From: Octopus sinensis
Lineage: Eukaryota
Direction: 5' to 3'
Length of the DNA: 64,000 bases
Assembly (NCBI RefSeq): GCF_006345805.1
Contig: NC_043010.1
Coordinates: 18,166,001-18,230,000, forward strand
A program made the position numbers and the translations under genes. The notes beneath the pieces are model-generated. The model saw only the letters and a list, made by a program, of their open reading frames with translations. It did no database searches and was not told where the DNA came from. Of this stretch, positions 26,901-59,051 are shown piece by piece (position 1 is the stretch's first letter; each line of letters begins with the position of its first letter).

Positions 26901-28910
26901 GTATAAGACACTTGTCCAAGGTGCAATAAATTGGGTCTGAACCTGGAACCATGTAGTTAGGAAGCAAACTTCTAACCACAGCCAATGCATCTTGCATATT
27001 TGTTGAAATCTCACCCCAGTCAACTTTGCTTTTCGCCCTTCCAGGATCAATAAAATCAGGTACCAGTCACATACTGAGGTCAATTTCATCAACAAAGCTT
27101 CTCTTTTCAAAAATTGCTGTCCTTGTGGAAAGATAGAATCGTTGGTGTCTTTGGACAAAATGTTTTGCAGGATTTACCTGAAGCCCTTCACATTCAGAAT
27201 TCAAATCCTGCAACGATAAACTTTGCTTGTCTTCCCTCTTGGGTTGATAAAATAAAATACGGGGAGATGTTAGGGTTAATATGATTATCCACCACCCTAA
27301 ATTTCTAATGTTAGAAGTAACAATTATCTTTATTATTATTATTATTAATAAGTCATAGTGTGTGTGTGAGGTGGGGTATATAAACAAATGATTACTAGAT
27401 TGGCTATATTATTGTTACAAGTTCAATTCGCTGCTCTTCTGGGACTCTGGTGAGAGAGGAAACAAAAATGTTTCCCTTGGTCTAGAGGCCTGACAACACA
27501 GAGCGGTCAAGGGTGGTCAGATGGGAGTGTCTTTAAAATGGGAGATGGATTCACTTTACTGTTGTTATATTTCTTTGTTCAAAATTTAAATTCTGCTGAA
27601 GGCAACTTGGCTTATCTTTAAGTCTATAAAACTAGATACCAGTCATATTTTGAGGTCCAGGTTGTACTTCTTCCTCCTTCACTTCAATGTGGCTGAATGC
27701 TTTAATTTCATTCTCCTCCTGGAAACCGTAGAATAAGTACCAGTTATACATTGTGGTCACTTTATGTAACAATGTCCTCTGCTCTGCAACATTTGCGCCG
27801 AAGCTAGACATCATCACCATCATTATTCCCACTGCTAGGGCAGTGACAGAGCATCATACCAAATGTTTTATAGTATTTAGATTCACACTTGCACGTTCTG
27901 AGTTCAAATCCTGCCCACAGTATATAAAATTAAGAAACCAGTCAAGAACTGGGAAAAGGAAGCAATTAATGAATGGCCGTCACCAAGAAATCACCATGAT
28001 TATTATTATTATTATTATTATTATTGTTGTTGTTGTTTAAAGTGTGTGCTGTGATGTGACAGTTTGTTCTCAGTTATATTCCCAAACACATTTGAAAACC
28101 TTCTCTCATCGTCGCTTCCTTGAGAAAGGCATCTCCTTCACATTATCTTACACTCATCCCCAACACCCTTTCAAAAATATAAAACAAAACTAAAATTCCC
28201 CGGCCTCCAACCTCTGTATGTCATCGTTTATGATTATGATTATTATTATAAGAAAACTATTGTTGTTATTGTTGTTGCAGGTAACATAGTGTAGTAAAGC
28301 TAGACCTATGTTAGTTGCTTTCAATTCCTGACTGGATCTTCTTCACTTCACTAAATGTTACTAATACCATTGGGAAAGGTATGAATGCCACAACTCCCAC
28401 CTTCCCTCCCTTTGAAAAATAAAAAAAATTCACCTGCTTCATGCGTATGTAAGAATACATTACCATTATGATCATGATTATTATTGTTATTATTATTATA
28501 ATTATATTATTACTTCTATTACCATTGATTATTATTATTATTATTATGTTGTTCACCCAGAATATTCTAGAAAGATGTATTTAAGACTGTTTTGCTACCT
28601 GTTATCAGTTCAGAGTTCTGTTAATAAAATATATTTAAAAAAAATCTACAGCAATAAAGTTGTTTTTGTAATTATTTCATCAAATAATTTTGTTTTATTG
28701 TTTTTGCATTGTGCCAACCCCTCCTCTTACACAATCACAAATCCCTTTCATTTTAGCTTGCTAACCCAGTATAAAACTGAAGACCAACATTACAGGTGTC
28801 TGCTACACATGTATCTAGGGCAGTGCTGTTGCTATTATACACACACACAACGAACATCCATTTGTTTTGTGGCCTCTTAGAGTCCATTCTGTCAGCTTTT
28901 TTTTTATATA

Positions 28911-30377: not shown

Positions 30378-30650
30378 CTAGATGCCCTTAGAAGTAAGTA
30401 ATGTTCCTTCTCGAGCCATGCTAGGCTCATAAGGGCCGGTTTCTCAGTTTCAGTGGCGTAGAAATTCCCCACCTGGACGGGACGGTGTTTCGTCACAGGA
30501 TTACTCATTTTTGCCAGCTGAGTGGACTGGAGCAATGTGAAATGAAGTGTTTTGCTCAAGAACACAACGCATTGCCCAGTCCAGGAATCAAAACCACAAC
30601 CTTACGATCACGAGTTCAACACCCTAACCAATAAGCCACACGCCTCCACT
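30378..30650 (-). mobile_element. tRNA-headed SINE with CORE-like central domain (family D)
   Basis: TTCTTGAGCAAAACACTTCATTTCAC resembles the CORE motif. Copies at ~18040-18275 (+) and ~60950-61185 (+). Confidence 0.7.
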
Positions 30651-31535
30651 AGATGCCCTTCCTAACACCAACCACCCTGCAAAGTGCCCTGAGTACATCT
30701 TATCATGACCCCAACAAAAGAGAGATAGTCGTGTCCTCATCAAGTCCTCTCAATCTCACACTTTAGAGTGTAGTGGGTACATTTTCTTGTGTCACTAGAG
30801 AGATGGTGATATCCAAGTAAAGTGTCTTGTTGACCCTTTCTCTTCTCTTACTCACTGGCGATTGTACAGTCTCCTGGTTGAGTTTATGCAGGCACCAGCT
30901 GTAGTGGGGTTGCTTTGTACCATGCAAGATAAAGGAGTTCTCACTACTCTGCGTAAGAGCTGAAACCAATGAAGAATTATAAACAATTGAAATAAAGAAT
31001 TATTATATAAAACAGTTTTATTTAAGGTTCCACCTGTAGGTTTTTCAACAGGAATCAAATGTGTATTAGAAATTTAAAAAACATATTTAGGATTTTCGTC
31101 TCTCATTTATGTCACTAGCTACAAGCATGGCTGTGTGATGAAGAAGATCGCTTTGTGATTACGTAGTCTCAGGATCAATTCCATTGCATGGCATCTTGAG
31201 CAAATGTTTTCAATCGTAGCCTTGAACTGATAAATACCTTGTGAGAGGTATTTGTCAGTGAGATGGAACTGTGTGGAAGCCTGCTTAAAGGAGCATTCTC
31301 ATTATTGAGTGATAAACTTAATACATCACCAAGCTGCACAACTCCACCACCTGGCCATTGTGAACCTTTAGCAGGGACCACTCTGTGACGAGTATTCAGT
31401 CCAAGTGTCTAGTTTGAGGGTTACCTGGTTCCACCAGCCTTGGAGGCTCTGGGAAATATAATAGACACCGGTTGTTGATTTGTTGTGCTTCTGGACAGAA
31501 CACTATATTCTACATGACCAGTCCAGGACCAAAGT

Positions 31536-33440
31536 TTATGAATAATCTTTGATGACATCTTCACATCCAACCCAAATCTGTTGAGTTTCTGTTGTCAAAT
31601 GGTTGCTGTAATGAAAGTTATCCTGCTGATCATCTTTCAACTTGGATTGATAGTGTTTGATTAGACTTACATATCTACTTCGAATGGCTAATGAACTATT
31701 GCTGGGTTCAAACTGTAACAAGATTTCAGCTGATAAGAGAAGAACCAGGTATGAATGGATGGAATGATCTCCCTTGTCGTCTGTAATGAATTGCAGAACG
31801 CTGTCTACAAAACTGAGGTCGACCTTGCTGTAAAGCACAAAGGTTAACAACAGACTATCAACGACTGATTTGACAAAGATGAACTCAGGATGAAGATTAA
31901 CAGTCACTGGTAAGATGTGCTTGACTTGATCCCACGTGGGGCTGTACTGATGAAATATCAGCCTGATTTCTTTAATAAACCCATGGAGGATATTCTTTGT
32001 GTCTTCATAGTGTGATGAACTAAGGTCAGCTCTGTAGAACCACAGCAAAGTGATTAACCAAGCCTCTAGGTTAGCTTCTGGTACAGTGAAACTATGTTTC
32101 AATAGATAAGCTATAAATTTCAAACGGAAGTGCTGTGTCTGAAACCAAACGTGAACAAGATCGAATCCAGCACACCTCCAGATTTCTGTTTGCTGGAAGA
32201 AAGACTTCATATTTTGAACACATTCTGATACGTCCTGGTAAGGAATCAAAATATACTGTTTAAGTATTTCATGAAGAAATGAAGGGTACAAGCAATAAAG
32301 TGATATGGAATCTTCTCTAGAGCTGTATTCTGTTGTGTGTCGATGAACACAGTCATAGAAAACAGACAATACATTGAAAATGCTGGCCCCACCACCGCAA
32401 TGTCTTCTCACTGTACTGTTTTTCTCGTCCACAGCTATCATATTCTTAACGACAGAGTGGAATACATTCGAAGTTTCCAAAAATAATTGTGTATCCTCAG
32501 CACAGGCTTTGGGAAGTTGTCTGGAATTTATTATTCTCTCCACGTGTTTCCTACAGTAACACCAATCCAAGCTTGCGCGGATCAACAACAAGATTTCTCG
32601 TTCTAAACTAGGCATATGACTGATCCATAATCTATACTGACTGTAGAAGCTTAGGTACCCGGGAGAAGGCGGATTAGTAGATACGCGGCTACCCGTATAT
32701 ATACTCGATTCTAAACTATCCAAGCTTTGGTAAAAGTCTAAAACGACACCCGAACAAGGCTGTGTTGAAAGATAGTCCATGAATGCATCAACCAAAGTCT
32801 GAAGGCGTGGTTGCTGCGAATTGTGCAAGAGATAAATCAATACCGAGCAAACGTCAGAAAGACTGTCAGAAGACATGACTATGCCACTGGGGAGAGGTGT
32901 ACCATTAACAGTATCAGTGCTTATCTTAAGGTCCATAATATACTGTCTTAACACTGTTATGGCCTTGTTGCATATTAATTCGGTATGCAAGCCAAGTTGA
33001 TCATGAAGATATTTTCCTTCGGCATCGACATTCATTAAGCAGTTTCGAAGTTTTGAGATGACCCACGGATTGGTTCGTATTCCTGTAGGTAGGACATAAC
33101 CAAAGTCATATGTATTTAAAATACACTCCATTATAAGTCGATTGATGTCTGAATGTAACGTTAAACTATTTACCTGAGTCAAACAGTCTAACAAGCGATA
33201 GATATTTTTCATGTCGTCCGAGAATAACGAACTATCATTAGACTTCTCTGATAAATACTGCTTTAATTGTTGAAGTATTCCTATAATTTCTGGAAATCTT
33301 TTAAATAAATTATTGTCTGGTTTCGGTATAGTCTCATCGTAAGTGAAATTTAATTGATTCAATAATGTAGTTATCTTGTTTTCCAGGGTTCTATCAATTG
33401 ACGTCGTCGCTGACTTAGAAGCGGAACTGACGCCCGCCAT
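31536..33440 (-). CDS. FANCC: Intronless FANCC-like protein (Fanconi anemia core complex subunit C), 634 aa from ATG at 33440
   Basis: Uninterrupted ORF with acaattATGG context. Colinear motifs versus human FANCC as recalled: KRFPEIIGIL~ERFPTIGQLL; RLWISHMPSLEREIL~CLWLRHLPSLEKAML; ERIINSRQLPKAC~ECFIKDSSLPQAA; HVWFQTQHF~ESWFLFIHF; WLITLLWFY~LLWLLAFYY; VDSLLLTFVLY~IRHLLLNFLLW. Confidence 0.75.
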   Translation of the reverse strand: MAGVSSASKSATTSIDRTLENKITTLLNQLNFTYDETIPKPDNNLFKRFPEIIGILQQLKQYLSEKSNDSSLFSDDMKNIYRLLDCLTQVNSLTLHSDINRLIMECILNTYDFGYVLPTGIRTNPWVISKLRNCLMNVDAEGKYLHDQLGLHTELICNKAITVLRQYIMDLKISTDTVNGTPLPSGIVMSSDSLSDVCSVLIYLLHNSQQPRLQTLVDAFMDYLSTQPCSGVVLDFYQSLDSLESSIYTGSRVSTNPPSPGYLSFYSQYRLWISHMPSLEREILLLIRASLDWCYCRKHVERIINSRQLPKACAEDTQLFLETSNVFHSVVKNMIAVDEKNSTVRRHCGGGASIFNVLSVFYDCVHRHTTEYSSREDSISLYCLYPSFLHEILKQYILIPYQDVSECVQNMKSFFQQTEIWRCAGFDLVHVWFQTQHFRLKFIAYLLKHSFTVPEANLEAWLITLLWFYRADLSSSHYEDTKNILHGFIKEIRLIFHQYSPTWDQVKHILPVTVNLHPEFIFVKSVVDSLLLTFVLYSKVDLSFVDSVLQFITDDKGDHSIHSYLVLLLSAEILLQFEPSNSSLAIRSRYVSLIKHYQSKLKDDQQDNFHYSNHLTTETQQIWVGCEDVIKDYS

Positions 33441-34200
33441 AATTGTCACGGTAACCGATGGCTTGGGATCGGAGCAATAGTTTCGTATTCCCCACCCGTC
33501 ACATCTGGTTAAGTTACTTAAACGTAATCTAACAGTTTCATTTATGGTCGAAAATACTGATTAATTAATCTGGTTTAAGTTAATTTGTAATAAAAACGCA
33601 GTGGAATATTGCTAATACTAACAAGATTACAACACGTAAAGAGATTAAAAGTAAATAGTTTACTACATTTGCCAAGACACCGTCTTTTAAGCTGAATGTT
33701 GCAAACTTTTTTAAAAGTTTATTCTTTTCACAAATGCAATTTAAAGCAAATTTAATTATATAAATCTGCTTTAAAATATAATTTAATAGAAAACAAAAAA
33801 AAATAATAAAATAAAACGCATTTGAATACGAAAGTACGAATTAACAACTGTATTATTGTTCGTGACAGCTCTGCAATGGCTAAAGTACCCCAGCTTGGAG
33901 CGAACATGGCCACGGCAGTCCGGCACTTCTGTTCGACCACTGTCAATGCGAAACGTCATATAAAAACTATGTAAGCCCATCATTTAAACAGACATTGTCA
34001 ACTTGTTGGCCATTGACATCAAATGACAGCGTCCTTCAGTTTAATTATTGGTGTATTGTAAGCAAGTGAGCCATACCCTTAACTTTTACAGATCCTTGTA
34101 AGGTCCGGTTATTTGTGGGTTTCCATCTGCTGCCCACCCCGCTTCTCTCTTGGTACACGTATTCCCTTTAGTCATTTCGTCTACAGGTGACCAGGGTGGA
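33441..34200. promoter_or_regulatory. Candidate bidirectional promoter region (FANCC-like leftward, NMNAT non-coding first exon rightward)
   Basis: Locally CpG-rich, repeat-free sequence directly upstream of the FANCC ATG. A candidate donor AA|gtgagc at 34066 could splice to the NMNAT acceptor ending at 38365. Confidence 0.4.
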
Positions 34201-34387
34201 TATTATTCTCATTCTTTTTCCTTCTAAAACTTTTAGGTTTTTCGATTCTAGGCCCTGCTTCCACCTTCAGAACTTTTTGCCCTGTCAAAAGAATTGAATT
34301 GGAAATTAACTATTGAGTCAAAACTCCTAATTTCTTCAGAAGTATATACTTCAAGCGTCGTAGATTACGATTCTGCAAACACACACG

Positions 34388-34445
<58 letters not shown>

Positions 34446-38378: not shown

Positions 38379-38448
38379 ATGCCTCAAGTTGTTTTGCTAA
38401 GCTGTGGTTCCTACAATCCGATAACCAATATGCACTTACGAATGTTTG
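38379..38448 (+). CDS. NMNAT: NMNAT coding exon 1 (MPQVVLLSCGSYNPITNMHLRMF)
   Basis: Nucleotidyltransferase GxxxPxTxxH motif. Acceptor attag ends 38365; donor G|gtaag at 38449 (phase 1). Confidence 0.93.
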
Positions 38449-39009
38449 GTAAGAAAATGCTTTGTTATTTTATATATTATTTACAATTATTTAAAATGAA
38501 AGTAAAATTAGAAAGAAACCGGAATTTAAGGGGCGAAATGTATGTTGTTTCTGTATCTATACTGCGCACGGGAATATATTTTATATTTCTCTTTATTGTT
38601 ATATAATACGAAATAATAGAAAGCTGTCCTGTGACATCGGAAAGTATGTTCCGATTCTCTGCGCCCAGAGTTCAAATTCACTGAGATCAACTTTTCTTGT
38701 CATTATTTCGGGAGCCGCCAAAACTTTTAGGATCTCGGACAGAATGTTTTACTATATTTATTCCAACTCTTATTTTCCGAGTTCAAATCCCACATCGACC
38801 CTTATCTGTCCGCCGCCCTATTAAACACATTCACTGAGATTGAAAATAATTGTGTGATGTGTGGACAGCAGTTTCTTCTTTTTTTATGCATTATATTTTG
38901 ATATAATCGGAATCTACGCCATCTGAAAGGTATCTTTAGGAAATTTCATTAAAAAACACCCACTTAGGTACGCACTTGTGTAGGTATGCATGTGTGTGTG
39001 TGTATATAT

Positions 39010-39054
<45 letters not shown>

Positions 39055-39067
39055 GTAGAGTAATATG

Positions 39068-39214
39068 CTTTATTTAAAAGCAGCAGAAATTCAACAAAAC
39101 CTGTTACTCTGAGTTTCACGTTCCCGTTCGTCGAACGAATTGTCTGTCCGACGAACGGGAACGTGAAACTCAGAGTAACAGGTTTTGTTGAATTTCTGCT
39201 GCTTTTAAATAAAG
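39068..39214. repeat. Perfect 66-bp inverted repeat with 15-nt loop (Penelope-like terminal sequence)
   Basis: 39068-39133 is the exact reverse complement of 39149-39214. Confidence 0.95.
39143..39182 (+). ncRNA. Minimal type I hammerhead-ribozyme motif (U4C variant)
   Basis: Stem I UCUGU/ACAGG; core CCGACGA; stem II ACG-GGAA-CGU; GAAA; stem III ACUC-A-GAGU; GUA triplet with predicted cut after 39177. Confidence 0.6.
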
Positions 39215-39427
39215 TATATATATATATAATTGGTAACCGGGAGGAGAGTAGAGATATATTCACATCTAAAATGTTTTTTTATTATAAAGTTTTCTACAAA
39301 ACGTTTACGCTTGTGCACTAGTTAATTGGATCGTTGTGGATAGCCGGCATCTGTACCAATTTGGGAGATAATACGGTATCCGCCAGGATAACTTATCCCT
39401 TCTATACTCTCCCTCTGTGTGTGTGTA

Positions 39428-39481
<54 letters not shown>

Positions 39482-39812
39482 GTGTGTGCGTATATATATA
39501 CAGGCGTGCTTTCGGAGGAAGTCTATCGAAATTGAAAGTACTTGTTCGACAAATTCTGTGAAAATTTTTTTGTTTCTACTTAAATCGAGTGGTCCCGCAG
39601 GGTTAGGGTTACTTTTTAGGGAGCTCTGTATTTAAGTAGTACCAAAATTTTTTCTTTAATTTTACTTTCAGCTGAATCGCTTGTTTTTGTATTTTTCATG
39701 TATGTATGTATGTATGCATGTGTGTGTTTATGTGCATGTATGATTCACTGGAATGGAAATTACGGAATAAATACTTTCAGTTTCAATATACTTTCTCTGA
39801 AAGATCATCATC

Positions 39813-39847
<35 letters not shown>

Positions 39848-40188
39848 ATGTATGTATGTATGTAACGGTTAGGTTTTAATTAGTCTAGTTAACCAATTGT
39901 AACGGGTAAGATTGATTAGTAAACAATAATATGAGATGTCGGAGTCAGCAGTTGTAACGATAAAAATTGTTGTTACAACGGCATGTTGTAGAATGTGAAA
40001 GATGGACAATGCTTGAAGTTTTAATGAAATGTTTATTTACCGTTACGTTGAATAATACTATACCTCGACGGGCAGGTTATAAAATCCGAGAGCATGCGAA
40101 AGAAAGTTAGATATGGTAGAATTTTTCTTTGCATAGTTTGGCGTAAACGAATTGTTAGTCGTAATCCGCAGATGGCGGTAGAATGATG

Positions 40189-40617
40189 GCATCTTTTCGG
40201 TTTGAACGGCAGTTTTTAACATACTTTCTAGGTAACTAAAAAATTTTAAACTTCGTATACTGGTAGAATGTGTTTATAAAACATCATTTTCTCTTGGCTT
40301 TATTGAGAACATCGCCGAAAAGGCCGAAAATTCTATAGTTTGTAAGATATTTGTTGTTTTTCTTCAATTTCTTCAATTTCAACCAATCACTGACGTCTAT
40401 TGAGTTAAAAAAAAACTTTCTGTTCCGTATGTATATGTCCCTCGTTTAAGAAACAGATTGGGTTTATTTACATTTGTGAAGAAAAGAAGATACCCTTCCC
40501 CCACCCCTAACCCTAACACAGATTGAAATGCAATAGATCGATACTAGGGTCATAATTATGGGTGACAATTTCATATGAAACCGCTAGAAAAAACTGCCGT
40601 TCAAACCGAAAAGATCC
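40189..40617. mobile_element. MITE copy 1 with ~26-bp TIRs (Merlin-like ends)
   Basis: TIR (G/C)ATCTTTTCGGTTTGAACGGCAGTTTT at both ends. 8-bp TSD GAATGATG at 40181-40188 and 40618-40625. Confidence 0.85.
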
Positions 40618-42153
40618 GAATGATGTTGTAAGAGAAAGTTGTGTTGTGGGACATTGTCTCACGGTTGCTGACAGTAAATTTCATTTCTCTCGCTGACCAT
40701 TATCTTTAGTAGCTGCATTCCTTGTGATCATGATTCTAGCAGTCCGTTCCCTAACCGAGTCGTCACGAGCCGCCTCGCTCCGTTGTCGCCGAGTGACCAC
40801 CTGGTTTTTGCTTGGGGGTTCTTGTTTTTATAACTATCCAGAAGGATAGACATATCGTTGAGAACAATGGGCTTCATTGGTGGTACTGTATCTCTATTCT
40901 AGCTTTTGGTGAAGTAGAAGAGGTTATAAGGGTCAAGTGATGAAGACATTATTTCGGCCTAGCTAAAGGCAATCTGGCAAATATAAATTGCCATCAGAGA
41001 AAAACCATTGTTCCACCGTGAGAAAAGTTTTGTTGAACTGTTAATTTAAATTTGGCTAAGGTGGATCGAATCCACTTCATGCCTGCAAGATCCTGTATGT
41101 ATGTATATATCATCATCATCATCGTTGTTTAACATCCCCTTTCCATGCTAGCATGGATTGGACGGTTTGACTGTGGGCTGGCGAACCAGATGGCTGCATC
41201 AAGCTCCAGTCCTGAACTGGCAGTTTCTACAGCTGGATGCCCTTCCTAACGCCAACCACTCCGAGAGTGTAGTGGGTGCTTTTACGTGCCCCCCCCTCAA
41301 ATTTTGAGTGAGGTCGGCGCCAGTACCGCCTGACTGGCCCATGTGTATCTATATATATATATATATATTTATATATATAGTAGAACTGCCTTATTTCTAA
41401 CAGAATGTTGTTATTAAGGAGTACTGGAAGAAAACAAGTTCCAAATGGAAAATGAAACCTCATTCGTTTGTGGATGCCTGAAAACCTGCATCTCTCTAAA
41501 TGCCTGTCTTTCTTTAAAAGCTATAATCCTCTTTTAATTACTTGCCAACAATGGCTAACTTGTCTGTTTTTGGAAGGCTTTCCGGTCCAGGCCAATCAAT
41601 TGTTTGTCGAATTGTTTAATCTGTGACTATCCAGTATTTTAAAAAGCGTTCCTATCATGACCATCCCTTTTTTTAAAACCAAAATCTTTCTTATACCACA
41701 CCCTACTATTTATTTAAAAAAAAAAAACCCAATGTAGTCTGGGGAAAAATTGAATCCGAAAATTAAAAGATGTGGGGGTTAGGGAAATGCTCTTGATCCT
41801 GGGTCTACTGACTCAGAAATACACACTAACAAGCAACAAACTCAACTCATTTCAGCCAAGAGCAGCCCTCTACATGGTCATCCAACTGGCTGAAATGATA
41901 TGATATGAAGGACATTTTGGCTTGACCGTTTAGCGTTCAGATGACTTCATCAAATGTAATGCTTATTGTTTCATTGTTTTAAATTAATCACTCATTGTCT
42001 TTGTAGCTTTGAGATTTCAAAGTGTGTGTTTGTATGTTTTTAGAATGATAGTGTAGGGTAGGTGTGAGAGATTGGATCTGGTCAGTTTTAACATAAGACA
42101 AGTAGAATATTTGGGCCAGATATAACCATATTAAATGCCAAAATGTTAAAAAG

Positions 42154-42332
42154 ACATTGAATAGTCATGGAAGGCTATCATGGAAGAAAGATAGATTTAC
42201 TGAAAGACGTATGTTTTGCACATGTGTGCACAAATGAACCACATTGAATAGTCATGGAAGGCTATCATGGAAGAAAGATAGATTTATTGAAAGACGTAAG
42301 TTTTGCACATGTGTGCACAAATGAACCACATT
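42154..42332. repeat. 87-bp tandem duplication
   Basis: acattgaatagtcatgg...aatgaacc repeated at 42154 and 42241, with 2 substitutions. Confidence 0.9.
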
Positions 42333-42709
42333 TTATTTTCCAAATAAAATGTTAGAAAGCTATCTGGTGCACTGTCCTTTTTGACTCAATTTCGGTAAAC
42401 AAATAATCACCAAATGATGTTTTGGTACAAGACCTTCTTGTCAGAATTCAACCAGAAATGCAATCAAAATCTCACCATAACATTTTAGGTTGGAGATAAA
42501 CTATTCTCCTTCTTTGATGGTGTGCTTTCACTGGGCTGAAACTTTAAAGATGGAATCAACTGTGTTGCTTTTCAGAGACAGAAGAACCATTATTTGTACC
42601 AACACTTTCTTTTTTTTTTAATTCTTAAAATTTTGCTTGGATTTGTGTCTTGGAGGGGAACTTCTAGGTGTAATCCAATGGTCATTCGTGACCGAAATGG
42701 GTCTTCGCT

Positions 42710-42745
<36 letters not shown>

Positions 42746-42755
42746 TGTTGTGAAT

Positions 42756-42971
42756 GGGGAGAGTCATTCTCTTTTAGTGCCTTATTATTTAACACACTCA
42801 CCGGTAAAATTTATACTTATTTTTATTTTCTAAAATTTTTGTTGCGTCTTGCAACCTTTTCAATAGTCTTGACTCTCAGTCAAGACCATTAAAATAAAAA
42901 TAAGAAATAAATGGAAATTTTACCGGTGAGTATGTTAAATAATAAGGCACTAAAAGAGAATGACTCTCCCC
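42756..42971. repeat. Inverted repeat (57-bp arms, 1 mismatch) with an inner short stem
   Basis: 42756-42812 versus 42915-42971; inner GTCTTGACT/AGTCAAGAC stem. Confidence 0.9.
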
Positions 42972-43102
42972 AGACACAACAGAATATGCTTCAACACACG
43001 AACTCATGTAAAGAATCTTGCAAACCAAATCCAAAATCGAAATATATATATGGTGCCACATAGAAAAGCACCTAGTACGTTCTGTAAAGTGGTTGGTGTT
43101 AG

Positions 43103-45235
<2,133 letters not shown>

Positions 45236-45575
45236 TAAAATCAGGGGGAATGTAGGCCTATCCTCATAGGGTGGCATCATTTGAATGTTACAAGAATGTG
45301 AGGAAGCACATTGTGGCCAGGGGAATATGACAACACCACATGGTCTGGTTGATACAGCGAGGTAGTCAGTATGTGAGACATAGAGATGCTCAATGTAGGA
45401 AGCATGTAGTGGTGCTCAAATGATCAGAACTTAAACTCCATGGTCTTTACAAGGTCCATGGGGTAAAAAGTGGCTTTATGAGAAATCCAGGCGAGCCTAT
45501 ACAGAGATTGTGAAGCAGATAAATACAATTAGGCTTGATATATATTTAAATATACATATAGATATATATATAGGG

Positions 45576-45623
<48 letters not shown>

Positions 45624-46076
45624 TTATTTATCAATGCATATAAATGTGAAAGTGCTTGTACATATGTGTTTTTATCTGAATATACTTAGTCTTTGTACTT
45701 ATCTATATATATATATATATTTTTTACATGGAGTATAAAGAATACAGAAGAGTAAGGGGAGAATGCATAGTTTTTTTAAACTCAACAGCTGTTTCTGGGA
45801 GTTTGGAATTATGTAGTTGTTGTAATGTTCAAAATTAGTAGATGAAACGTGCAAAAAGTCATAGATATGCAACCAGTTGATTGCTGCATAGAAACATTAC
45901 CATAATAAGGGCTCCCTTTGTCAGGAAAAGAAGCTTGGCAGATGGTAATTCACATCATTGTGCAAGAGATTTATAGGTTGAATGAGAGGAGAGGCAGAGA
46001 GGAATAAGAAGCTAGCTATGTATGTATATAAGTATGTACTTAGACACATGAAAAGTGATTCTTAAATGTTCTTCAG

Positions 46077-46144
46077 GACTTGATCAGCTCATATCATCGA
46101 TGTAAAATGGTGGAGAAATCTTTAGAGAGTTCTGATTGGATCAT
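46077..46144 (+). CDS. NMNAT: NMNAT coding exon 3 (DLISSYHRCKMVEKSLESSDWI)
   Basis: Not in the ORF track; found by reading the sequence. ttcttcag acceptor, AT|gtaagt donor, 68 nt, phase 0 to 2. HR..M and SDW motifs. Confidence 0.88.
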
Positions 46145-46906
46145 GTAAGTTGACCTCTTCTTGCTTCAGTTTTTAACTTTCCTTCTTAGACATAGAACTT
46201 GAGGGCAGAATTTTAGCTGCTTTTAACTGAACATTATTAATATTCTTGTGATACCCCTGAACTCTGTGTGTGTGTGCATAAATGTATTCTTCACTCATCA
46301 CCAGTTGAACAAAAGACTGGAAGTGCTGACATTCCTTATGATTGGCCGGTCTGTCCATACTTTTGAAAACCTCTGGAATGATATATCCCTTACTTGAAAA
46401 GCAGGTATTGGTTAGCAAGGGGAAGAGCATTCATCTGTAAAATCCTGCTTCAAATTAATGTTTTCTCCAACCCATTGGACATCAAATAAGCAAATGGAAG
46501 ATAGAGTTATCTGACAATCAGGAACAAGGCGTAAAAGATACTAATTTAGTCACCAGTTCCAAGAACAAGGGAGGGAAATCTGTTTGTTCCAACAGTAATG
46601 GAATCCTCCCCCCCATTGTCCATTGCTATGGAAGCTCATGGTGAGGGACATGTTCAAAAGACTGATCCAATCAATAAAAGGAACATCAGAACAGAGTTAC
46701 GGTGCAGCTGCCACAGAAGACCAAGAAACATATTCTTTATAAAACAACTTTAGGAGAAATGTGGGAGACACCACGAGATCTTGACTTTGTTTATTGCAGT
46801 TGTGGATCTGGTAAAAACGTTTTGATATTGGTAAGCAAGGAACTTCAGAGAAAGTTTGGTCACTTGCACCAATTCTTGAATCTTCTCTACTAGTTCCACA
46901 GAATGA

Positions 46907-47306
46907 GGATCTCTTCGGTTTGAATGGCAGTTTTTTCTAGCGGTGTCATATGAAATTGTCACCCATAATTATGATCCTAGAATCGATCTATTGCATTTCA
47001 ATCTGTTTTAGGGTTAGGGTATCTTTTTTTCTTCACAAATGTAAATAAACCCAATCTGTTTCTTAAACGAGGGACATATTCATACGGCACAGAATGTTGT
47101 TTACCTCAATGGACGTCATTGATTGGTTGAAATTGCAGAAATTGAAGTAAAAAAAAACAACAAATATCTTACAAACTATAGAATTTTCTCAATAAAGCCA
47201 AGAGAAAAAGATGTTTTATAAACACATTCTACCAGTATATGAAGTTTAAAATTTTTTAGTTACCTAGAAATTATGTTAAAAACTACCGTTCAAACCGAAA
47301 AGATCC
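46907..47306. mobile_element. MITE copy 2, inverted relative to copy 1
   Basis: Same TIRs and internal sequence in reverse complement. Flanks CAGAATGA / TGGAATGA. Confidence 0.85.
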
Positions 47307-47946
47307 TGGAATGATAGCTTGAGTTTCTGTTAGGGGGGGGCAAAAATCGGTGCTGTTAAATATAAATCCACGAGAAGTTCTTGTCCTGGTTGTTGTTCAA
47401 TGTTGCAATTCTTCCTGAGTTGCCAAAATACTTTCAACTGGAATTGATTTGAGATTTGAAACTTTTGTGGAAAATTTAGCTCTGAGGATTGTCTAAGGCA
47501 AGTTTGGTTGAGGAATGCTTCCCAACCACATGGTTCCAGGTTCAGTCCTACTGCATGGCACCTTAGGCAAGTGTCTTCTGCTATAGCCTTGAGCCAAATA
47601 AAGCTTTGTGAGAGGATTTGGTAGATGGAAACTGAAAGAAGCCTGTCATATATTTATGTATATATCCGTGTATCTTTATGTCTGCGTTTGTCCCCACCAT
47701 TGCTTGACAACCAGTGTTGGTGTGTTTATGTCCTTGTAACCTAGCGGTTCAGCAAAAGAGATTGATAAATACTGGAGCTAATTTCTTTGACTAAAAAAAG
47801 ATTCTTTAAAGCAGTGCCCCAGCATGGCCACAGTCTGATGACTGAAACAAATAAAAAACCAAAAAATTCTGTTTGGAATCTGTTTGCATGTCTAAAACAT
47901 TTCTTCATTAGAGTTTCACTTAATTAATTTGTTGTTTGCTTTATAG

Positions 47947-48050
47947 ATTAGATCGGTGGGAGAGCGACCTGAACTGCTGGACCGAGACTCGTCATGTGTT
48001 GGCCTACCACAGCAACAGATTGAATAGTTCAGAGACAACCAACCATATCG
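47947..48050 (+). CDS. NMNAT: NMNAT coding exon 4 (LDRWESDLNCWTETRHVLAYHSNRLNSSETTNHI); 3' end at 48050 or 48077
   Basis: ttatag acceptor (phase 2). D.WES...W.ET..VL motif. Two in-frame phase-1 donors: G|gtacat at 48051 and G|gtaatg at 48078. Confidence 0.85.
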
Positions 48051-48969
48051 GTACATTTATTCATAAACACTCTAATGGTAATGTGTATGTGTGCACGTGT
48101 GTGTATGTGTGTGTTATTCATAAACACTTTAATGGGTGTGTGTGGTGGCGAGCTGGCAGAAACGTTAGCACATCAGGCAAAATGCGTAGCTGTATTTCGT
48201 CTGCCGTTATGTTCTGAGTTCAAATTCCGCCGAGGTCGACTTTGCCTTTCATCCTTTCGGGGTCGATTAAATAAGTACCAGTTATGCACTGGGGTCGATA
48301 TAATCGACTTAATCCGTTTGTCTTTCCTTGTTTGTCCCCTCTATGTTTAGCCCCTTATGGTTAGTAAAGAAATAGATAATGTGTGTGTATGCATGTGTGT
48401 GTATGGAAGTGGTTATGGCGTTGGTGGTGGTGTTGATTGCTTGATAATCTCCAGCACCATGGTGCTGGTGTTGTTTCAGGCCCTGCTCTGATTTAGCAGA
48501 CCCATGACCAAAATGCTCCGACCATGGCCATCCTATCTTCATTTCCAAGGTATTGTGTATCTAGGAGTACATATCAAATATATCTTTCCTTTCATTGTGC
48601 TGTTTATGCATGTGATTTGAGAGTAGTTTGGTTGTCACATGACCTGCTAGAATAGTAGGTCATTGAATGTTGGGTTTCATGGTGTTGGCGATAGTGGTGC
48701 TGGTTGTAAGTTTATTATTATCATGAAATCAAAAAAACGGCAGAATTGTTAGCATGCTGGGTAAAACGCTTTGCAACATTTCGTGTCTTTAGGTTCTGAG
48801 TTCATATTCTGCCGAGGCTGACTTTGCTTTTTTTCCTTTCAAGGTCAGTAAATACCAGTCAACCAACTTAACCCCTCCCACCAAACTAGCTGGTCTTGCG
48901 CCAAGATTTGAAGCCAGTTTTATTGTATTTAATTTTATCTCTCTGTTAGAGTTAATTTAATCATTTACC

Positions 48970-49553
48970 CCTTTACCATTTTACTTGGAGCAAGTACCAG
49001 TCATACACTTGGATCATTTCTGTTAACCATTATTTTTAGTCTTTGAACTAGGCCCCCTCCCCCCTACTGTAATATTGATTACGTCAATCCTAATATTGAA
49101 TTGACCTGCTAAAGGGGAGTAACGACAAATTGACCCTGTCCCTTAAAAATTTCTGCTGAAATTGTTTTATATTTAAATGTTTTTTAGTCCAAAGAGAAAC
49201 CATTTTTGGCATTGGTGATATTCTGCTTGGAACCAATATCTGATATTCTATTGGAACCAATATCTGACTTGTTGAATTTTTTGTACTACATGTCCAGCTA
49301 GCACTTTTGACCAATAGCCAAATGCTGATCATAGTCTATTTTGCTGACAATTCCAATTTCTTAGGCAGCAGAAATTTATAAGGGACAGGGTCAATTTATC
49401 GTTACTCCTCCTTAGCAGGTCAATTCAATATTAGGGTTGACGTAATCAATATTACAGTGGGGGAGGGGGTCCCAGTTCAAAGACTAAAAATAATTGTGAA
49501 TAGAAATGATCCCAGTGTATGACTGGTACTTGTGCCAAGTAAAATGGTAAAGG
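48970..49553. repeat. Long diverged inverted repeat (~188-bp arms), foldback/MITE-like
   Basis: 48970-49158 versus 49366-49553. The spacer has a direct repeat of TGGAACCAATATCTGA. Confidence 0.88.
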
Positions 49554-49896
49554 AGTATTGATGTTTATTTCTTTCCTAACACCATAGATGACCATTCTCT
49601 TCAGCTTGCAAAAATTTCTAATCCTTTAGAATGCTCAGGTGAGACCCAGAACAGCATATGGCTTCTCCATCCAGGGCAAATTGGCACAGAGCAAATTGGT
49701 CGACGCACTCCGACCTCTGGTTGGCCACAGATGAGTTGTCTCCCCTTCCATAAACGCTCTCTGGCTCACAAACATTTTTTACTTTCTTTTCTACTACTTC
49801 TATTCTGGCCCCTTTCGAGCTGGTTGCTCGGATGCTGCCCTTATTCAAACCCTCACAACTTATTCATTTCTCTTCTCATTCCTGCATCATGTCTAC

Positions 49897-52800
49897 CAGG
49901 GGCGTGCACTCTCAGCAATGCAAGGTATGTGCTGCATGCCTTCCTTGTTTCAAAGAAAATACGTCCAGTTGTTTTAGAAATATTGTCTCCACTTCGTACA
50001 TCTGCTTTGATAAATGCTTTTAGAAGATCGCATGATACACACTCCCTCTCTGTCTGTATTAGTTTGTCCTTCCTTCCTCTCTCTCTCTCTCTATCTTAGT
50101 GACTCGATAAATTTATCGCTTGTCATGCGTTGGGAAGACAGCATGAGTCCCTTCTCTCTGTCTTTGATAGTTTGTCCCTTCTCCCTCTTTCTTTGTTTAA
50201 AAGATATACTACGAGGAATGGTCACCCCTTCTCTCTCAGCGATTCGACAAATTCAGTTTGGCATGTCATGCTGTGCTTAGATCGCATATCACGCCTCTGG
50301 CTATTTTGACCGGAACACGAGCCGTCCCATAATTCTTGTTTTAGCCAGCTGAAATGTTGGAATAGCCTTCGCATGTAAGTTTGAAATTTTTTATCCAAAA
50401 CATCCGTTTGCACTATCATATTTTTAGAATGTTTTGAAAGCAAAAATATCTACATTATATTTCTTATTTCAGAAATAGCTAATTAATCTTAAATTAATTT
50501 AACAAAGGGTATTTTTCCGTTTTGTTGAAATTGACTTAAAATTTACGCCGGCGCTTCCACGTGGGTCCTTAAATAAGAGCAGCCTTTTTAAAAATGAGTG
50601 AAATGTGTGCTATAAACGATATTTTGAGAACTAGTTTTTCTAAAAGGGACTTCGATGGGAAAAAATTAATTATAAATCGCGGGAGACCAACACCAAATTT
50701 ACCTAATTTGCGAAGCTACAACAAGAAATTCACGAGACAATTTCAGGTTAATTCGTATGAAAAGAAGAAATGGTTAACTGGAAGTGTTGCTCTTAATAAA
50801 TTATTCTGTTGGCCGTGTTTACTTTTTGGCTTAGAAAAAAATGTTTGGAATGATAAAGGCTATGATGATTTAAATAATTTACATATGGCTATGCTAAAGC
50901 ACGAGCGTTCTCAAAGGCATATAAAATGTTTGATAGACCTTAAAATATTCGGGAATGTTCGCATAGACTTACAATTAGATGCACGTAAAAATCAAAGCAT
51001 ACAACAGCATAATGAGAAAGTTCGACGAAACAGATCCATTCTGCAACGATTGATCGATGTTGTTATTTTTTTAGGCCTCCAGGAATTATCGTTTCGGGGT
51101 CATTTTGAATCTGAAGGCTCTAATAATCGGGGAAATTATAAAGAACTCGTTTATTTGATCAGTAAGTATGACAAACAAATGGAAAGTCATTTAGATACAG
51201 CTTCTATCTTCACTGGTCTGTCGAACAGAATTCAAAATGACTTGATCGAAGCAATTCATAAAGTTATGTTGAATGAGATGCAGAAGGAAATTGACCAAGC
51301 TAAGTTTGTTTCTATTCTTGTTGATGAGACATCTGATGTCTCAGCATCTTCACAACTGTCAACAGTTTTACGTTATGTTACAGAAGACTGTGTGACGAAA
51401 GAACGATTTATAGGTTTTAGTGATGTTAGTGCAGATCGATCTGCAAATGCTTTATCTGAACATGTTTTTAAATGCATTGAGACGTGGGAATGTGGAAACA
51501 AATTGATTGCGCAGACATATGATGGTGCCGCTACAATGGCAGGACAACTAAATGGGTTACAGGCAAAAGTAAGAAAGAAATATGAATGTGCGATCTTTAT
51601 TCATTGTTGTGCCCATATCCTAAATTTAGTTCTTTCACAATCATGCTCTGCTATGAAAGAATGCAAGATATTTTTTTCTACAATAAATGGACTCGGTACA
51701 TTTTTTACGAAATCACCGAAAAGGACTAATGCATTAGATAATATTGTTAAAAAAAGATTTCCGAAAGCAACAGCAACTAGATGGAATTACTCCTCACGTC
51801 TTATTATTACCACAAAGGAAAATTATAATTTCATAATCAGCCTTTTTGAACACATCATTGAAGATCCTGAAGCATGGGATGAGACCACCATAAATTCAGC
51901 AATTGGATTCTTACACATTTTAAAAGCTCCTGATTTCTTATTTTTGTTAGAGGTATTCAGTGACATTTTTTCTTTTACTGACGTCTTATTTAACATCCTC
52001 CAGAGTAAAAGTCATGACATAGTGTATTGTAAACAGCAAATAGATAAAACTAGAACTGTACTCGAAAACAAACTTGATAATTTTTCAGTCTTTTATGATA
52101 GGTTAGGGGAAAAATATGGAGTCGATGCAGGAATCGGAATTCAGAGATCCAAGAATATATCTATTGATCCCCAACGACATTATAGAACGCTTTATAACAA
52201 AATTATAAGTACAATAGTTGACCAAATAAAAGCACGATATTCATCCTTAGAAGAGTTTAAATTCATGGAACTTTTGAATTTCAACAAAGTTGATGAGTAT
52301 TGCAAACAATTTCCTGTGGACTCTTTAGATTCTTTAAGAACAACTTATGGCAGATTTTTTGATGTAATACGATTACAAAGTGAGCTCAATGTGATGTATT
52401 CAATGAAAGATTTTAAAAAACCAAGTGTAAGTCATTTAATGAGTTACATTAACAACACTGATCTTGTTGAAGCTATGCCAGAACTCTTCAATCTGTGCAA
52501 GTTGATTTTGACAATTCCGTCTACCACTGCTTCTGTAGAGCGATCCTTTTCTGCATTAAGTAGAATTAAAACATACCAAAGAAATGCGACAGGAGAAAGA
52601 AGACTGTCTGGGTTAGCACTAATGTCAATTGAAAAAGATTTATTACAAGAATTGATGAAAAGAGAAGATTTCTATGAAAATGTGATAGATATATTTGCCC
52701 AGAAAGATCGAAGAATTGAATTAATTTATAAATGAGCTAAGTAACATTTTAAAACATTAAAAAATATATATATTAAAGAGCATATATTACAGGTTTTGCT

Positions 52801-53695
52801 TAGTGTTTGTTATAACGTAAGGTTCGACCTTCTTACATCAGTATTGTTTCGCAGGAGAAATGTTTTGATTTGTTCGTGAAACCTACCTACATAGATTTCC
52901 CTTTCTGTGCTGCTGGGTGTAGTCTATTTACGGCCGTAAATAAGTGTTTTGTTTCACTTTCAATAAGTGTCTTGTTTCAATCTCAGAGATGTTGACTTCT
53001 GCCACAACAGTTTTGGGAGGCTTTTTACAATGTTGAATTTTCGCTGTCTTTCATTGTGTGCGTATTCATGTATATGCGTGTATTTTCAATGTGTGTGCAT
53101 GAGACGTAGTCTTTTAATGTACGGAGTTCAGTAAGTCTCAGAACAGTCAATAATTTTCCCGGAATTGACAAGTAGCATGATAAAGAACCTGACTTGTCTT
53201 CGAGAGAGTAATGATCTAAAACCATGGCCATATAATGTAACTAAATGTGTTCTTTTAATTAAATCATTTCATTCACCTCAACCGATAGGTATAGGGGCTA
53301 ATGCAGAATCGCACCCCTTTGAAAAACGAATTTATGTGAAAATTTTTTTTCGGATTCCTACCTTTAACAGAGATTCTGAATATGCAAAAATATTGACAGA
53401 ATCCAATTTCATCTTTATTACATTTCACTTATGATTTTTAGACTTTTCTAAGGGAGAATGAGGATGGGAAAGTACTGACGTTTCGAAGAGCAAAGAATAA
53501 TACAAACAATACACTTATTTCAGGATCATCTCTGCACAGCCATTTTTTATTCCCTGTTTATTCTGCATATTCAGAATCTCTTATATGTAAATCGTAGGAA
53601 TACGAAAATGTTTTACTGAAAAATTGCCGGTGGGAGGGGGGGGGGGCAATGAAATTAATTGCATGCCCAACGCCGGAAGTCACCGCACGCCACTG
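49897..53695 (+). mobile_element. Full-length autonomous hAT DNA transposon (3799 bp) in NMNAT intron 4
   Basis: 11-bp TIRs CAGGGGCGTGC / GCACGCCACTG (1 mismatch). Perfect 8-bp TSD ATGTCTAC at 49889-49896 and 53696-53703. Confidence 0.95.
50594..52735 (+). CDS. hAT transposase (ZMYM1-like/DUF4371 type), 713 aa, intact
   Basis: FCWPCLLF zinc-finger region; catalytic motifs LVDETSD, TYDGA, HCCAHILNL, TRWN, SVERSFS; C-terminal hAT dimerisation region. Confidence 0.92.
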   Translation: MSEMCAINDILRTSFSKRDFDGKKLIINRGRPTPNLPNLRSYNKKFTRQFQVNSYEKKKWLTGSVALNKLFCWPCLLFGLEKNVWNDKGYDDLNNLHMAMLKHERSQRHIKCLIDLKIFGNVRIDLQLDARKNQSIQQHNEKVRRNRSILQRLIDVVIFLGLQELSFRGHFESEGSNNRGNYKELVYLISKYDKQMESHLDTASIFTGLSNRIQNDLIEAIHKVMLNEMQKEIDQAKFVSILVDETSDVSASSQLSTVLRYVTEDCVTKERFIGFSDVSADRSANALSEHVFKCIETWECGNKLIAQTYDGAATMAGQLNGLQAKVRKKYECAIFIHCCAHILNLVLSQSCSAMKECKIFFSTINGLGTFFTKSPKRTNALDNIVKKRFPKATATRWNYSSRLIITTKENYNFIISLFEHIIEDPEAWDETTINSAIGFLHILKAPDFLFLLEVFSDIFSFTDVLFNILQSKSHDIVYCKQQIDKTRTVLENKLDNFSVFYDRLGEKYGVDAGIGIQRSKNISIDPQRHYRTLYNKIISTIVDQIKARYSSLEEFKFMELLNFNKVDEYCKQFPVDSLDSLRTTYGRFFDVIRLQSELNVMYSMKDFKKPSVSHLMSYINNTDLVEAMPELFNLCKLILTIPSTTASVERSFSALSRIKTYQRNATGERRLSGLALMSIEKDLLQELMKREDFYENVIDIFAQKDRRIELIYK

Positions 53696-57020: not shown

Positions 57021-57146
57021 ATATATATATATATATATCATTGTTTAACGTTGGCTTTCCATGCTGGCATATATATATATATACACACACATATATATAT
57101 ATATATATACACACACATATATATATACACACACACACATATATAT

Positions 57147-57237
<91 letters not shown>

Positions 57238-59023: not shown

Positions 59024-59051
59024 TGTGTGTGTCATCATCATCATCATCATC

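What the first reader, a model, noticed from the sequence alone, without database searches (positions are those of the whole stretch)
31536..33440. Intronless, full-length FANCC-like gene in an invertebrate genome
Seen: a 634-aa single-exon ORF in a genome whose neighbouring gene has multi-kb introns. At least six motifs align colinearly with vertebrate FANCC as recalled. Known: FANCC is a multi-exon gene in vertebrates, and several FA core-complex subunits are absent from fly and nematode models. Inference: a divergent FANCC orthologue that lost all its introns (retrogene replacement), implying a fuller FA core complex in this lineage. Automated annotation could leave it uncharacterised.
Basis: partly seen in the sequence, partly recalled or inferred. 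Interest (0 to 1): 0.75.

Follow-up and report, generated by a model that had tools for sequence, protein, structure and literature searches.

The report
Single-exon FANCC gene in octopus
This octopus gene is a real, working copy of the DNA-repair gene FANCC that lost all ten of its ancestral coding introns long ago, probably by being copied back from mRNA next to another gene's promoter; a tidy but not surprising case of a known kind of gene evolution.

Summary
Window 31536..33440 (minus strand) is an uninterrupted 634-codon ORF.

Identity as FANCC is well supported:
- Pfam Fanconi_C scores 52.8 bits against a cut-off of 25, over nearly the full length.
- A profile built only from cephalopod-like sequences hits human FANCC (7KZP chain C) at E = 4e-11.
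- The AlphaFold model's only specific structural match is 7KZP_C.

The gene is under purifying selection (dN/dS 0.30 against a second octopod).

The single exon is derived. FANCC in a bivalve and a gastropod has 11 coding exons with identical intron positions and phases, and about 8 of those positions are shared with a hemichordate.

The event is old. A sister clade (27-29% identical, probably squid or cuttlefish, taxon unverified) also has a single-exon FANCC. It sits head-to-head with the same NMNAT-like gene, whereas the bivalve and gastropod genes sit head-to-head with a RING-finger gene.

Ancient retroposition with loss of the parent copy, using NMNAT's bidirectional promoter, is the best explanation. 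It is inferred, not proven: no poly(A) or target-site relics remain, and I could not search whole cephalopod genomes.

FANCC outside vertebrates is already published, so a "fuller FA core complex" is not new. Existing annotations are poor: "uncharacterized" in O. bimaculoides and truncated to 117 aa in O. vulgaris.

The parts
31536..33440 (-). FANCC coding sequence, a single exon of 634 codons plus the stop codon (31536-31538)
   Evidence: ORF. Pfam PF02106 E = 3.6e-14, 52.8 bits, residues 55-574 against profile 44-537/560. Profile hits to human FANCC 7kzp_C. Fold match to 7kzp_C. dN/dS 0.30 against octopod contig L001, and all CDS indels are multiples of 3.
30649..31535 (-). Probable 3' UTR or conserved downstream flank. 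AATAAA at 31022. No poly(A)-like tract.
   Evidence: Colinear with contig L001 down to 30649 at 85% identity. Polyadenylation signal and A-tract scan. The extent of the UTR is inferred, not shown.
33441..33875 (.). AT-rich 435-bp spacer between the divergent FANCC and NMNAT start codons; the putative shared bidirectional promoter
   Evidence: Sequence. Head-to-head arrangement also seen in the O. vulgaris locus L005, genomic contig L004 and RNA-derived contig L008. Promoter function is inferred.
33876..33970 (+). First coding exon of the NMNAT-like neighbour as modelled in O. vulgaris (ATG at 33876, donor AT|GTAAGC)
   Evidence: The O. vulgaris gene model starts at L005 9562, which maps here. 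Sequence read.
38385..61997 (+). Further coding exons of the NMNAT-like gene (PF01467), at about 38385-38447, 43232-43321, 46074-46142, 47948-48043, 53891-54004, 56484-56657 and 61932-61997, separated by multi-kb introns
   Evidence: tblastn of the spliced NMNAT ORF from L008 onto the window. Pfam label. Boundaries are approximate.
33172..33173 (-). GT of a consensus-like splice donor (CAG|GTAAAT) inside the FANCC ORF after codon 89, used by the truncated O. vulgaris gene model
   Evidence: P0004 residues 1-89 map to 33440..33174. Sequence context.
27632..27718 (-). Downstream exon (28 codons plus stop, acceptor TTTCCAG|G) that the O. vulgaris model splices to FANCC codon 89, giving a 117-aa product
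   Evidence: tblastn of P0004 and the sequence with its acceptor. I did not test whether this isoform is real.

Best explanation
The ORF is the octopus orthologue of FANCC. FANCC is the alpha-solenoid subunit that, with FANCE and FANCF, forms the substrate-recognition module of the Fanconi anaemia core ubiquitin-ligase complex.

Its coding sequence is one exon because a spliced FANCC mRNA was reverse-transcribed and inserted head-to-head next to an NMNAT-like gene. This happened in an early cephalopod, before the split between octopods and a deeply diverged sister clade that is probably the Decapodiformes. The copy came to be expressed from the shared divergent promoter region, and the ancestral 11-exon gene was lost (retrogene replacement).

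Shown here:
- FANCC identity.
- A derived, complete loss of about 10 coding introns.
- Purifying selection.
- The shared NMNAT adjacency.
- Transcription in the sister clade.

Inferred:
- The RNA-mediated mechanism.
- Loss of the parent copy.
- Promoter sharing.
- The biochemical role.
- The taxon of the sister clade.
For: Identity:
- Pfam Fanconi_C scores above its curated cut-off and is near full length.
- Profile A3, built only from the window protein and its five cephalopod-like relatives, hits human FANCC 7kzp_C at E = 4.2e-11. With other metazoan FANCCs added the E-value is 2.5e-74.
- The AF2 model (pLDDT 76.7, pTM 0.78, all helical) has 7kzp_C as top Foldseek hit: prob 1.00, TM 0.45/0.51 over 632 columns. 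All other hits are generic solenoids with TM of 0.25 or less.

Functional gene:
- dN/dS 0.30 (pS 0.23 against pN 0.08, Fisher p = 1e-15), with only in-frame indels, while the flanks carry many indels.
- Intact orthologues in O. bimaculoides (90% identity) and another octopod (82%).

Derived intron loss:
- Solemya and Gigantopelta FANCC each have 11 coding exons with introns at the same alignment columns and the same phases.
- About 8 of the 10 positions coincide with Saccoglossus introns.

Age and locus:
- P0003 is a single 611-codon ORF on a 79-kb genomic contig, with NMNAT exon 1 about 1 kb upstream on the opposite strand.
- P0029 lies on an RNA-derived contig beside a spliced NMNAT ORF.
- These sequences and the octopods form a clade in 200/200 bootstraps.

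Relocation:
- The bivalve and gastropod FANCC genes are head-to-head with a 142-aa RING-finger gene, not with NMNAT.

No paralogue:
- The only octopus hits among 1.84 billion representatives are this gene's own orthologues.
- The window holds one FANCC-like locus.

Precedent:
- Amphioxus SYCP1 is a case of retrogene replacement with a co-opted bidirectional promoter (PMC5803294).
Against: - There are no direct relics of retroposition: no A-rich tract after the 3' UTR, and no target-site duplications were identified. That is expected for an old event, but it leaves the mechanism unproven.
- The change of neighbour is weak evidence for relocation, because coleoid genomes went through a massive ancient rearrangement. 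I examined only 3 kb of flank in the outgroups.
- Absence of a parental copy rests on protein databases, not on a genome search.
- The sister clade's taxon could not be verified.
- The O. vulgaris annotation splices out of the ORF at codon 89, so some transcripts may not encode full-length FANCC.
- A single-sequence phmmer search against PDB found nothing. The family link depends on profiles.
Confidence: 0.7

Rival explanations
1. In-situ intron loss. The ancestral multi-exon FANCC lost all its introns at its original locus by recombination or gene conversion with its own reverse-transcribed cDNA. The different neighbour (NMNAT instead of the RING-finger gene) is a by-product of the large-scale coleoid genome rearrangement.
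For: Coleoid genomes underwent an ancient chromosomal rearrangement that broke much ancestral synteny. No poly(A) or target-site relics mark an insertion. Only 3 kb of outgroup flank was examined.
Against: cDNA-mediated conversion usually removes a few adjacent, mostly 3' introns rather than all ten (established knowledge, not tested here). The gene sits 435 bp head-to-head from another gene's first exon, which is the typical setting of a surviving retrocopy. The RING-FANCC head-to-head pair is kept between a bivalve and a gastropod but is absent here.
Confidence: 0.2
2. The full-length ORF is not the main product. The locus is really a spliced gene, as in the O. vulgaris annotation (codons 1-89 joined to an exon 5.4 kb downstream, 117 aa), or the ORF is a decaying processed pseudogene.
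For: The O. vulgaris model CAI9732610.1 uses a consensus-like donor CAG|GTAAAT inside the ORF and a good acceptor at 27718.
Against: The 634-codon frame is intact in three octopods and about 600 codons are intact in three sister-clade lineages. dN/dS of 0.30 with Fisher p = 1e-15, computed over the whole CDS (not separately for the part beyond codon 89), and only in-frame indels. Residues beyond codon 89 carry the most conserved FANCC motifs. Unspliced full-length CDS is present in RNA-derived contigs of the sister clade.
Confidence: 0.05
3. It is not FANCC but an unrelated helical-repeat (HEAT/ARM-like) protein that matches the FANCC profile by composition.
For: Only 17-19% identity to non-cephalopod FANCCs. 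Single-sequence phmmer against PDB found no FANCC. Many alpha-solenoids appear as weak fold hits.
Against: The Pfam score is twice the curated cut-off with colinear coverage of 494 of 560 profile positions. Human FANCC is the top hit of the cephalopod-only profile by eight orders of magnitude in E-value; the only other hit is TBF1 at E = 0.005. It is also the only fold hit with TM near 0.5. The LWxxxxPSLE and LPxxC motifs are invariant. Direct tblastn from four named FANCCs gives E = 2e-7 to 5e-15.
Confidence: 0.03

Closest known systems
Human FANCC (PDB 7KZP chain C; Pfam PF02106 Fanconi_C), a subunit of the FANCC-FANCE-FANCF module of the Fanconi anaemia core complex
   Same: Same family by profile. 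Same all-helical solenoid fold. Similar length (634 against 558 aa). Conserved LWxxxxPSLE and LPxxC motifs.
   Different: About 16-18% identity. One coding exon here, against many coding exons in the vertebrate gene (vertebrate exon count from general knowledge, not checked). Interaction with FANCE, FANCF and FANCL is untested. Extra loops at residues 33-43, 115-122 and 341-349 are predicted with low confidence.
Molluscan FANCC homologues already named in RefSeq/GenBank (Gigantopelta aegis XP_041359685.1; Solemya velum KAL5016085.1)
   Same: Orthologous family and similar length (613-614 aa).
   Different: They have 11 coding exons over 12-17 kb and are head-to-head with a RING-finger gene. 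The octopus gene has one coding exon and is head-to-head with NMNAT. The cephalopod proteins are more divergent: 17-22% identity to the other molluscan sequences, against 26-28% among those.
Amphioxus SYCP1 retrogene replacement (Garstang and Ferrier 2018, PMC5803294)
   Same: A single coding exon replaces a multi-exon ancestral gene with a germline or genome-maintenance role. The copy lies next to an unrelated gene and appears to share its bidirectional promoter. The event is old and shared by related species.
   Different: For AmphiSYCP1, promoter sharing, 5' UTR exons and loss of the parent were shown experimentally or genome-wide. Here they are inferred. Different gene, different phylum.
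FANCC orthologues outside vertebrates reported by Singh et al. 2023 (PMC10085685)
   Same: That paper documents FANCC in Nematostella, Ciona, Hymenoptera, plants and some fungi, with absence from Diptera and Lepidoptera. An invertebrate FANCC is therefore expected.
   Different: The paper does not discuss cephalopods or molluscs or gene structure ('mollus' occurs 0 times).

Membership tests
FANCC (Pfam PF02106, Fanconi anaemia group C protein) | Scores above the curated gathering threshold of the family profile, with near full-length colinear coverage | tested here: met
   52.8 bits against a cut-off of 25. Residues 55-574 align to profile positions 44-537 of 560.
FANCC (Pfam PF02106, Fanconi anaemia group C protein) | Sequence relationship to an experimentally characterised FANCC, shown without circularity | tested here: met
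   Profile A3, built only from the window protein and five cephalopod-like relatives, hits human FANCC 7kzp_C at E = 4.2e-11 over 244-553, with a weak colinear N-terminal stretch. Single-sequence phmmer found nothing.
FANCC (Pfam PF02106, Fanconi anaemia group C protein) | Alpha-solenoid fold matching FANCC in the solved FA core complex | tested here: met
   AF2 model with pLDDT 76.7 and pTM 0.78. Foldseek top hit 7kzp_C: E = 8e-8, prob 1.00, TM 0.45/0.51. All other hits have TM of 0.25 or less. TM near 0.5 with a high rmsd means the match is moderate, as expected for a flexible solenoid.
FANCC (Pfam PF02106, Fanconi anaemia group C protein) | Orthology: single copy, grouping with FANCCs of related phyla | tested here: inconclusive
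   It groups with the mollusc FANCCs in an NJ tree (bootstrap was computed only for the cephalopod clade, not for this node), and no second octopus hit was found. Whole cephalopod genomes could not be searched.
FANCC (Pfam PF02106, Fanconi anaemia group C protein) | Binds FANCE and FANCF and is needed for FANCD2-FANCI monoubiquitination | not testable with these tools
   No complex prediction or experiment was available.
Retrogene replacement (orphan retrogene) | Single coding exon where orthologues have multiple exons at conserved positions | tested here: met
   Ten introns with identical positions and phases in Solemya and Gigantopelta, about 8 of them shared with Saccoglossus, all absent here.
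Retrogene replacement (orphan retrogene) | Genomic location unrelated to the parental locus | tested here: inconclusive
   The neighbour is NMNAT in cephalopods and a RING-finger gene in the bivalve and gastropod. Coleoid genomes are globally rearranged and only short flanks were seen.
Retrogene replacement (orphan retrogene) | Poly(A) remnant and target-site duplications | tested here: not met
   No A-rich tract downstream of the stop codon. Target-site duplications were not searched systematically. Such relics are expected to have decayed in an event this old, so this does not exclude the mechanism.
Retrogene replacement (orphan retrogene) | Parental copy lost | tested here: inconclusive
   No other octopus FANCC-like protein among 1.84 billion representatives, and none elsewhere in the window. 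No genome-wide tblastn was possible.
Retrogene replacement (orphan retrogene) | Copy is functional (constrained and expressed) | tested here: met
   dN/dS 0.30, Fisher p = 1e-15. RNA-derived contigs carry the full CDS in the sister clade. Expression in octopus itself was not shown.

The most novel reading that the evidence does not exclude
FANCC was replaced by a retrogene on the stem of coleoid (or all) cephalopods. The retrogene captured the divergent promoter of an NMNAT (NAD+ synthesis) gene, so that expression of an FA core subunit has been tied to NMNAT ever since. The copy then evolved unusually fast. This would be a previously unreported, clade-defining structural marker and a natural experiment in rewiring the regulation of a DNA-repair gene.
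Probability: 0.55. Interest if true: 0.4.

Novelty: new member of a known kind. Interest (0 to 1): 0.3.

Why it matters
Its importance is modest.

- **Annotation fix.** The octopus gene is currently "uncharacterized" in O. bimaculoides and truncated to 117 aa in O. vulgaris. It should be named FANCC.
- **A documented case of retrogene replacement.** This adds a well-supported example of complete intron loss, most likely by retrogene replacement, in a genome-maintenance gene. The probable promoter capture closely parallels amphioxus SYCP1.
- **A possible phylogenetic marker.** The single-exon state plus the NMNAT adjacency is a rare genomic change that could mark coleoid, or all cephalopod, ancestry once Nautilus and Vampyroteuthis are checked.

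It does not change what is known about the distribution of the Fanconi pathway, because FANCC outside vertebrates is already published.

Tried and rejected
- **Single-sequence phmmer against PDB** gave no FANCC hit. Profiles were needed.
- **Second word-indexed homology search** with the broad alignment A2 returned only the two close octopod proteins. That search was wasted.
- **Exact look-ups** of the window's own protein, the O. bimaculoides protein and the fish protein found no contigs.
- **Identifying the species** behind runs SRR11869385/90/91, SRR8281669/93 and ERR12921339 and assembly ERZ21867824, through full-text search, failed. Cluster members carried no names. The "Decapodiformes" label for P0003/P0026/P0027 is therefore an inference from the tree, the divergence pattern and the number of independent RNA-seq runs.
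- **My exact splice-chain finder** failed on Saccoglossus, probably because of the 10.6-kb run of N in that locus. Its exon boundaries are approximate tblastn ends.
- **tblastx of the outgroups' RING-gene flank** against the window found nothing. Only a 36-aa exon was available, so the test has little power.
- **Processed pseudogene** was rejected on constraint and conservation.
- **Contamination or horizontal origin** was rejected because the whole region is 96-98% identical to the O. vulgaris chromosome.
- **No Rfam families or tRNAs** in the window.
- **No terminal inverted repeats** were found around the hAT ORF.
Full report
**Observation**

The window carries an uninterrupted reading frame on the minus strand, from the ATG at 33440 to the stop codon at 31536-31538 (634 codons). 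The ATG has A at -3 and G at +4. Given the window's composition, 634 sense codons in a row have a chance probability of about 3e-19. Only two other ORFs in the 64 kb exceed 300 aa, a C2H2 zinc-finger ORF and a hAT transposase.

**Source organism**

The region is 96-98% identical over more than 20 kb to Octopus vulgaris chromosome OX597827.1 (locus L005). The protein is 90% identical to O. bimaculoides A0A0L8GP92. The window therefore comes from the O. vulgaris species complex. O. sinensis is a plausible guess that I did not verify.

**Identity**

- Pfam Fanconi_C (PF02106) matches at E = 3.6e-14 and 52.8 bits, against a curated cut-off of 25. Residues 55-574 cover profile positions 44-537 of 560.
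- A single-sequence search of PDB chains found nothing.
- A profile built only from the window protein and five cephalopod-like relatives (A3) hits human FANCC, 7KZP chain C, at E = 4.2e-11. A broader profile that includes named FANCCs reaches E = 2.5e-74, but that result is partly circular.
- An AlphaFold2 model is entirely helical (mean pLDDT 76.7, pTM 0.78).
- Its best Foldseek match in the PDB is again 7KZP_C, with probability 1.00 and TM 0.45/0.51 over 632 columns. Every other hit is a generic solenoid with TM of 0.25 or less.
- The motifs LWxxxxPSLE (residues 271-280) and LPxxC (309-313) are invariant across octopus, bivalve, gastropod, hemichordate and fish.
- FANCCs from a fish, Saccoglossus, Solemya and Gigantopelta each hit this ORF directly by tblastn (E = 2e-7 to 5e-15), and nothing else in the window.

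I regard FANCC family membership as established. Its biochemical role, bridging FANCE/FANCF to the FANCL ligase module for FANCD2-FANCI monoubiquitination, is inferred from the family.

**A live gene, not a pseudogene**

- A contig from a second octopod (L001, protein 82% identical) is colinear with window 34406..30649.
- CDS identity is 89%, with four indels, all of 3 nt.
- The flanks are 83-85% identical with many indels of arbitrary length.
- Nei-Gojobori dN/dS is 0.30 (dS 0.28). Synonymous against non-synonymous differences give Fisher p = 1.3e-15.

**The single exon is derived**

- Solemya velum (bivalve) and Gigantopelta aegis (gastropod) FANCC span 17 and 12 kb.
- Exact spliced reconstruction gives 11 coding exons in each. 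The ten introns fall at the same alignment columns and have the same phases, 0,0,0,1,0,0,1,0,0,0.
- These positions correspond to octopus residues of about 66/67, 128, 163, 249/250, 309, 376, 400, 457, 482 and 551.
- Saccoglossus has about 12 coding exons. About eight of its boundaries coincide with the molluscan ones to within one to three columns.
- This polarises the character even if cephalopods are sister to gastropods plus bivalves.

All ten introns are absent from the octopus ORF.

**Age of the event**

- The exhaustive HMMER search found P0003 (E = 7e-50, 27% identity), a single 611-codon ORF on a 79-kb genomic contig.
- P0003 has relatives P0026 and P0027 at 62% and 53% identity.
- In an NJ tree the three octopods and these three sequences form a clade in 200/200 bootstraps. 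The gastropod, the bivalve and another mollusc-like lineage fall outside it.
- On the P0003 contig, the first coding exon of an NMNAT-like gene lies about 1 kb upstream of FANCC on the opposite strand.
- In the window the same gene lies head-to-head with FANCC. Its modelled first exon is at 33876-33970, only 435 bp from the FANCC start codon, and further exons are spread to 62 kb.
- tblastx finds only these two genes shared between the two loci.

The single-exon FANCC beside NMNAT therefore predates the split of these lineages. Three sub-lineages, 53-62% identical to one another, with many RNA-seq runs behind them, fit Decapodiformes. I could not confirm the taxon.

**Expression**

Contig L008 carries a spliced NMNAT ORF and the full FANCC CDS 58 bp apart. 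Contigs L009 and L010 are identical to it from 51 nt upstream of the FANCC ATG but follow the genome before that point. L008 is therefore RNA-derived. Both genes are transcribed in that species, and their transcripts overlap or share a 5' junction. This is what a compact bidirectional promoter would give. I did not show expression in octopus itself.

**Mechanism**

Retroposition followed by loss of the parent copy fits four observations:
- All ten introns are gone at once.
- The head-to-head partner differs from the RING-finger gene kept in both bivalve and gastropod.
- The gene lies next to another gene's promoter.
- No second octopus FANCC appears in the protein universe searched.

The amphioxus SYCP1 case is a close precedent. 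It has a single coding exon, a lost parent copy and a co-opted bidirectional promoter (PMC5803294).

There are three caveats:
- No poly(A) tract or target-site relic remains.
- Coleoid genomes underwent an ancient wholesale rearrangement that would also break the RING adjacency.
- Genome-wide searches were not possible with these tools.

In-situ cDNA-mediated intron loss remains a live rival, at about 0.2.

**Comparison with what is known**

FANCC outside vertebrates is published, in Nematostella, Ciona, Hymenoptera, plants and some fungi (PMC10085685). RefSeq already names FANCC homologues in a gastropod, corals and Saccoglossus.

I found no paper linking FANCC with cephalopods. The existing octopus annotations are inadequate. 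The O. bimaculoides protein is "Uncharacterized protein". The O. vulgaris model CAI9732610.1 keeps only codons 1-89, splicing from an internal CAG|GTAAAT donor to an exon at 27718-27632.

**Verdict**

This is a correct and careful first-stage call. The gene is a new member of known kinds: the FANCC family, and retrogene replacement or complete intron loss. Its main value is as an annotation correction and as a possible rare genomic change marking cephalopod phylogeny. Interest is low to moderate.

Noticed in passing
window 33174/33173 (donor) and 27718-27632 (exon), minus strand; L005 10001-15809: The O. vulgaris annotation (CAI9732610.1, 117 aa) joins FANCC codons 1-89 to a small exon 5.4 kb downstream through consensus-like splice sites. 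It is either a mis-model or a real truncating isoform created by intronisation inside the retrogene.
   Followed up: partly
window 50594-52735 (+): Intact 713-aa hAT-family transposase ORF (DUF4371 plus the hAT C-terminal dimerisation domain) inside an intron of the NMNAT-like gene. No flanking terminal inverted repeats were found within about 2.5 kb upstream and 1.1 kb downstream.
   Followed up: partly
window 6149-7615 (+): 488-aa single-exon ORF with C2H2 zinc fingers at its N-terminus. It may belong to the expanded octopus C2H2 family.
   Followed up: no
window 48966-49557: Large nested inverted repeat (arms of about 100 nt, 89-92% complementary, 207-394 nt apart) in an NMNAT intron. It looks like a MITE or a foldback element.
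   Followed up: no
L008 1030-1087; L009 1-358; L010 1-108: In an RNA-derived contig of the sister clade, NMNAT's first coding exon is joined 51 nt upstream of the FANCC ATG, while two other contigs follow the genome there. The junction fits a GT donor on the NMNAT-sense strand (CTG|GTTATA) or an AG acceptor on the FANCC-sense strand. One of the two genes therefore has a 5' exon overlapping the other's 5' end.
   Followed up: partly
L006 1-2398 and L007 1-2358: A 142-aa RING-finger gene (zf-RING_2) lies head-to-head with FANCC in both Solemya velum and Gigantopelta aegis. This is deep molluscan microsynteny that the octopus locus lacks.
   Followed up: partly
window about 17087-17307, 41094-41290, 58120-58329, 62395-62582: Several copies of a roughly 200-bp interspersed repeat (82-93% identical to copies in the O. 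vulgaris locus), probably a SINE-like element.
   Followed up: no
window 33876-33970 (+): The O. vulgaris NMNAT model adds an upstream coding exon (MAKVPQLGANMATAVRHF...) that the sister-clade transcript lacks. It could be an alternative N-terminus, for example a targeting peptide.
   Followed up: no
window about 34390-34440: TA-rich simple repeat ((TA)n with interruptions) just upstream of the conserved FANCC/NMNAT promoter block.
   Followed up: no
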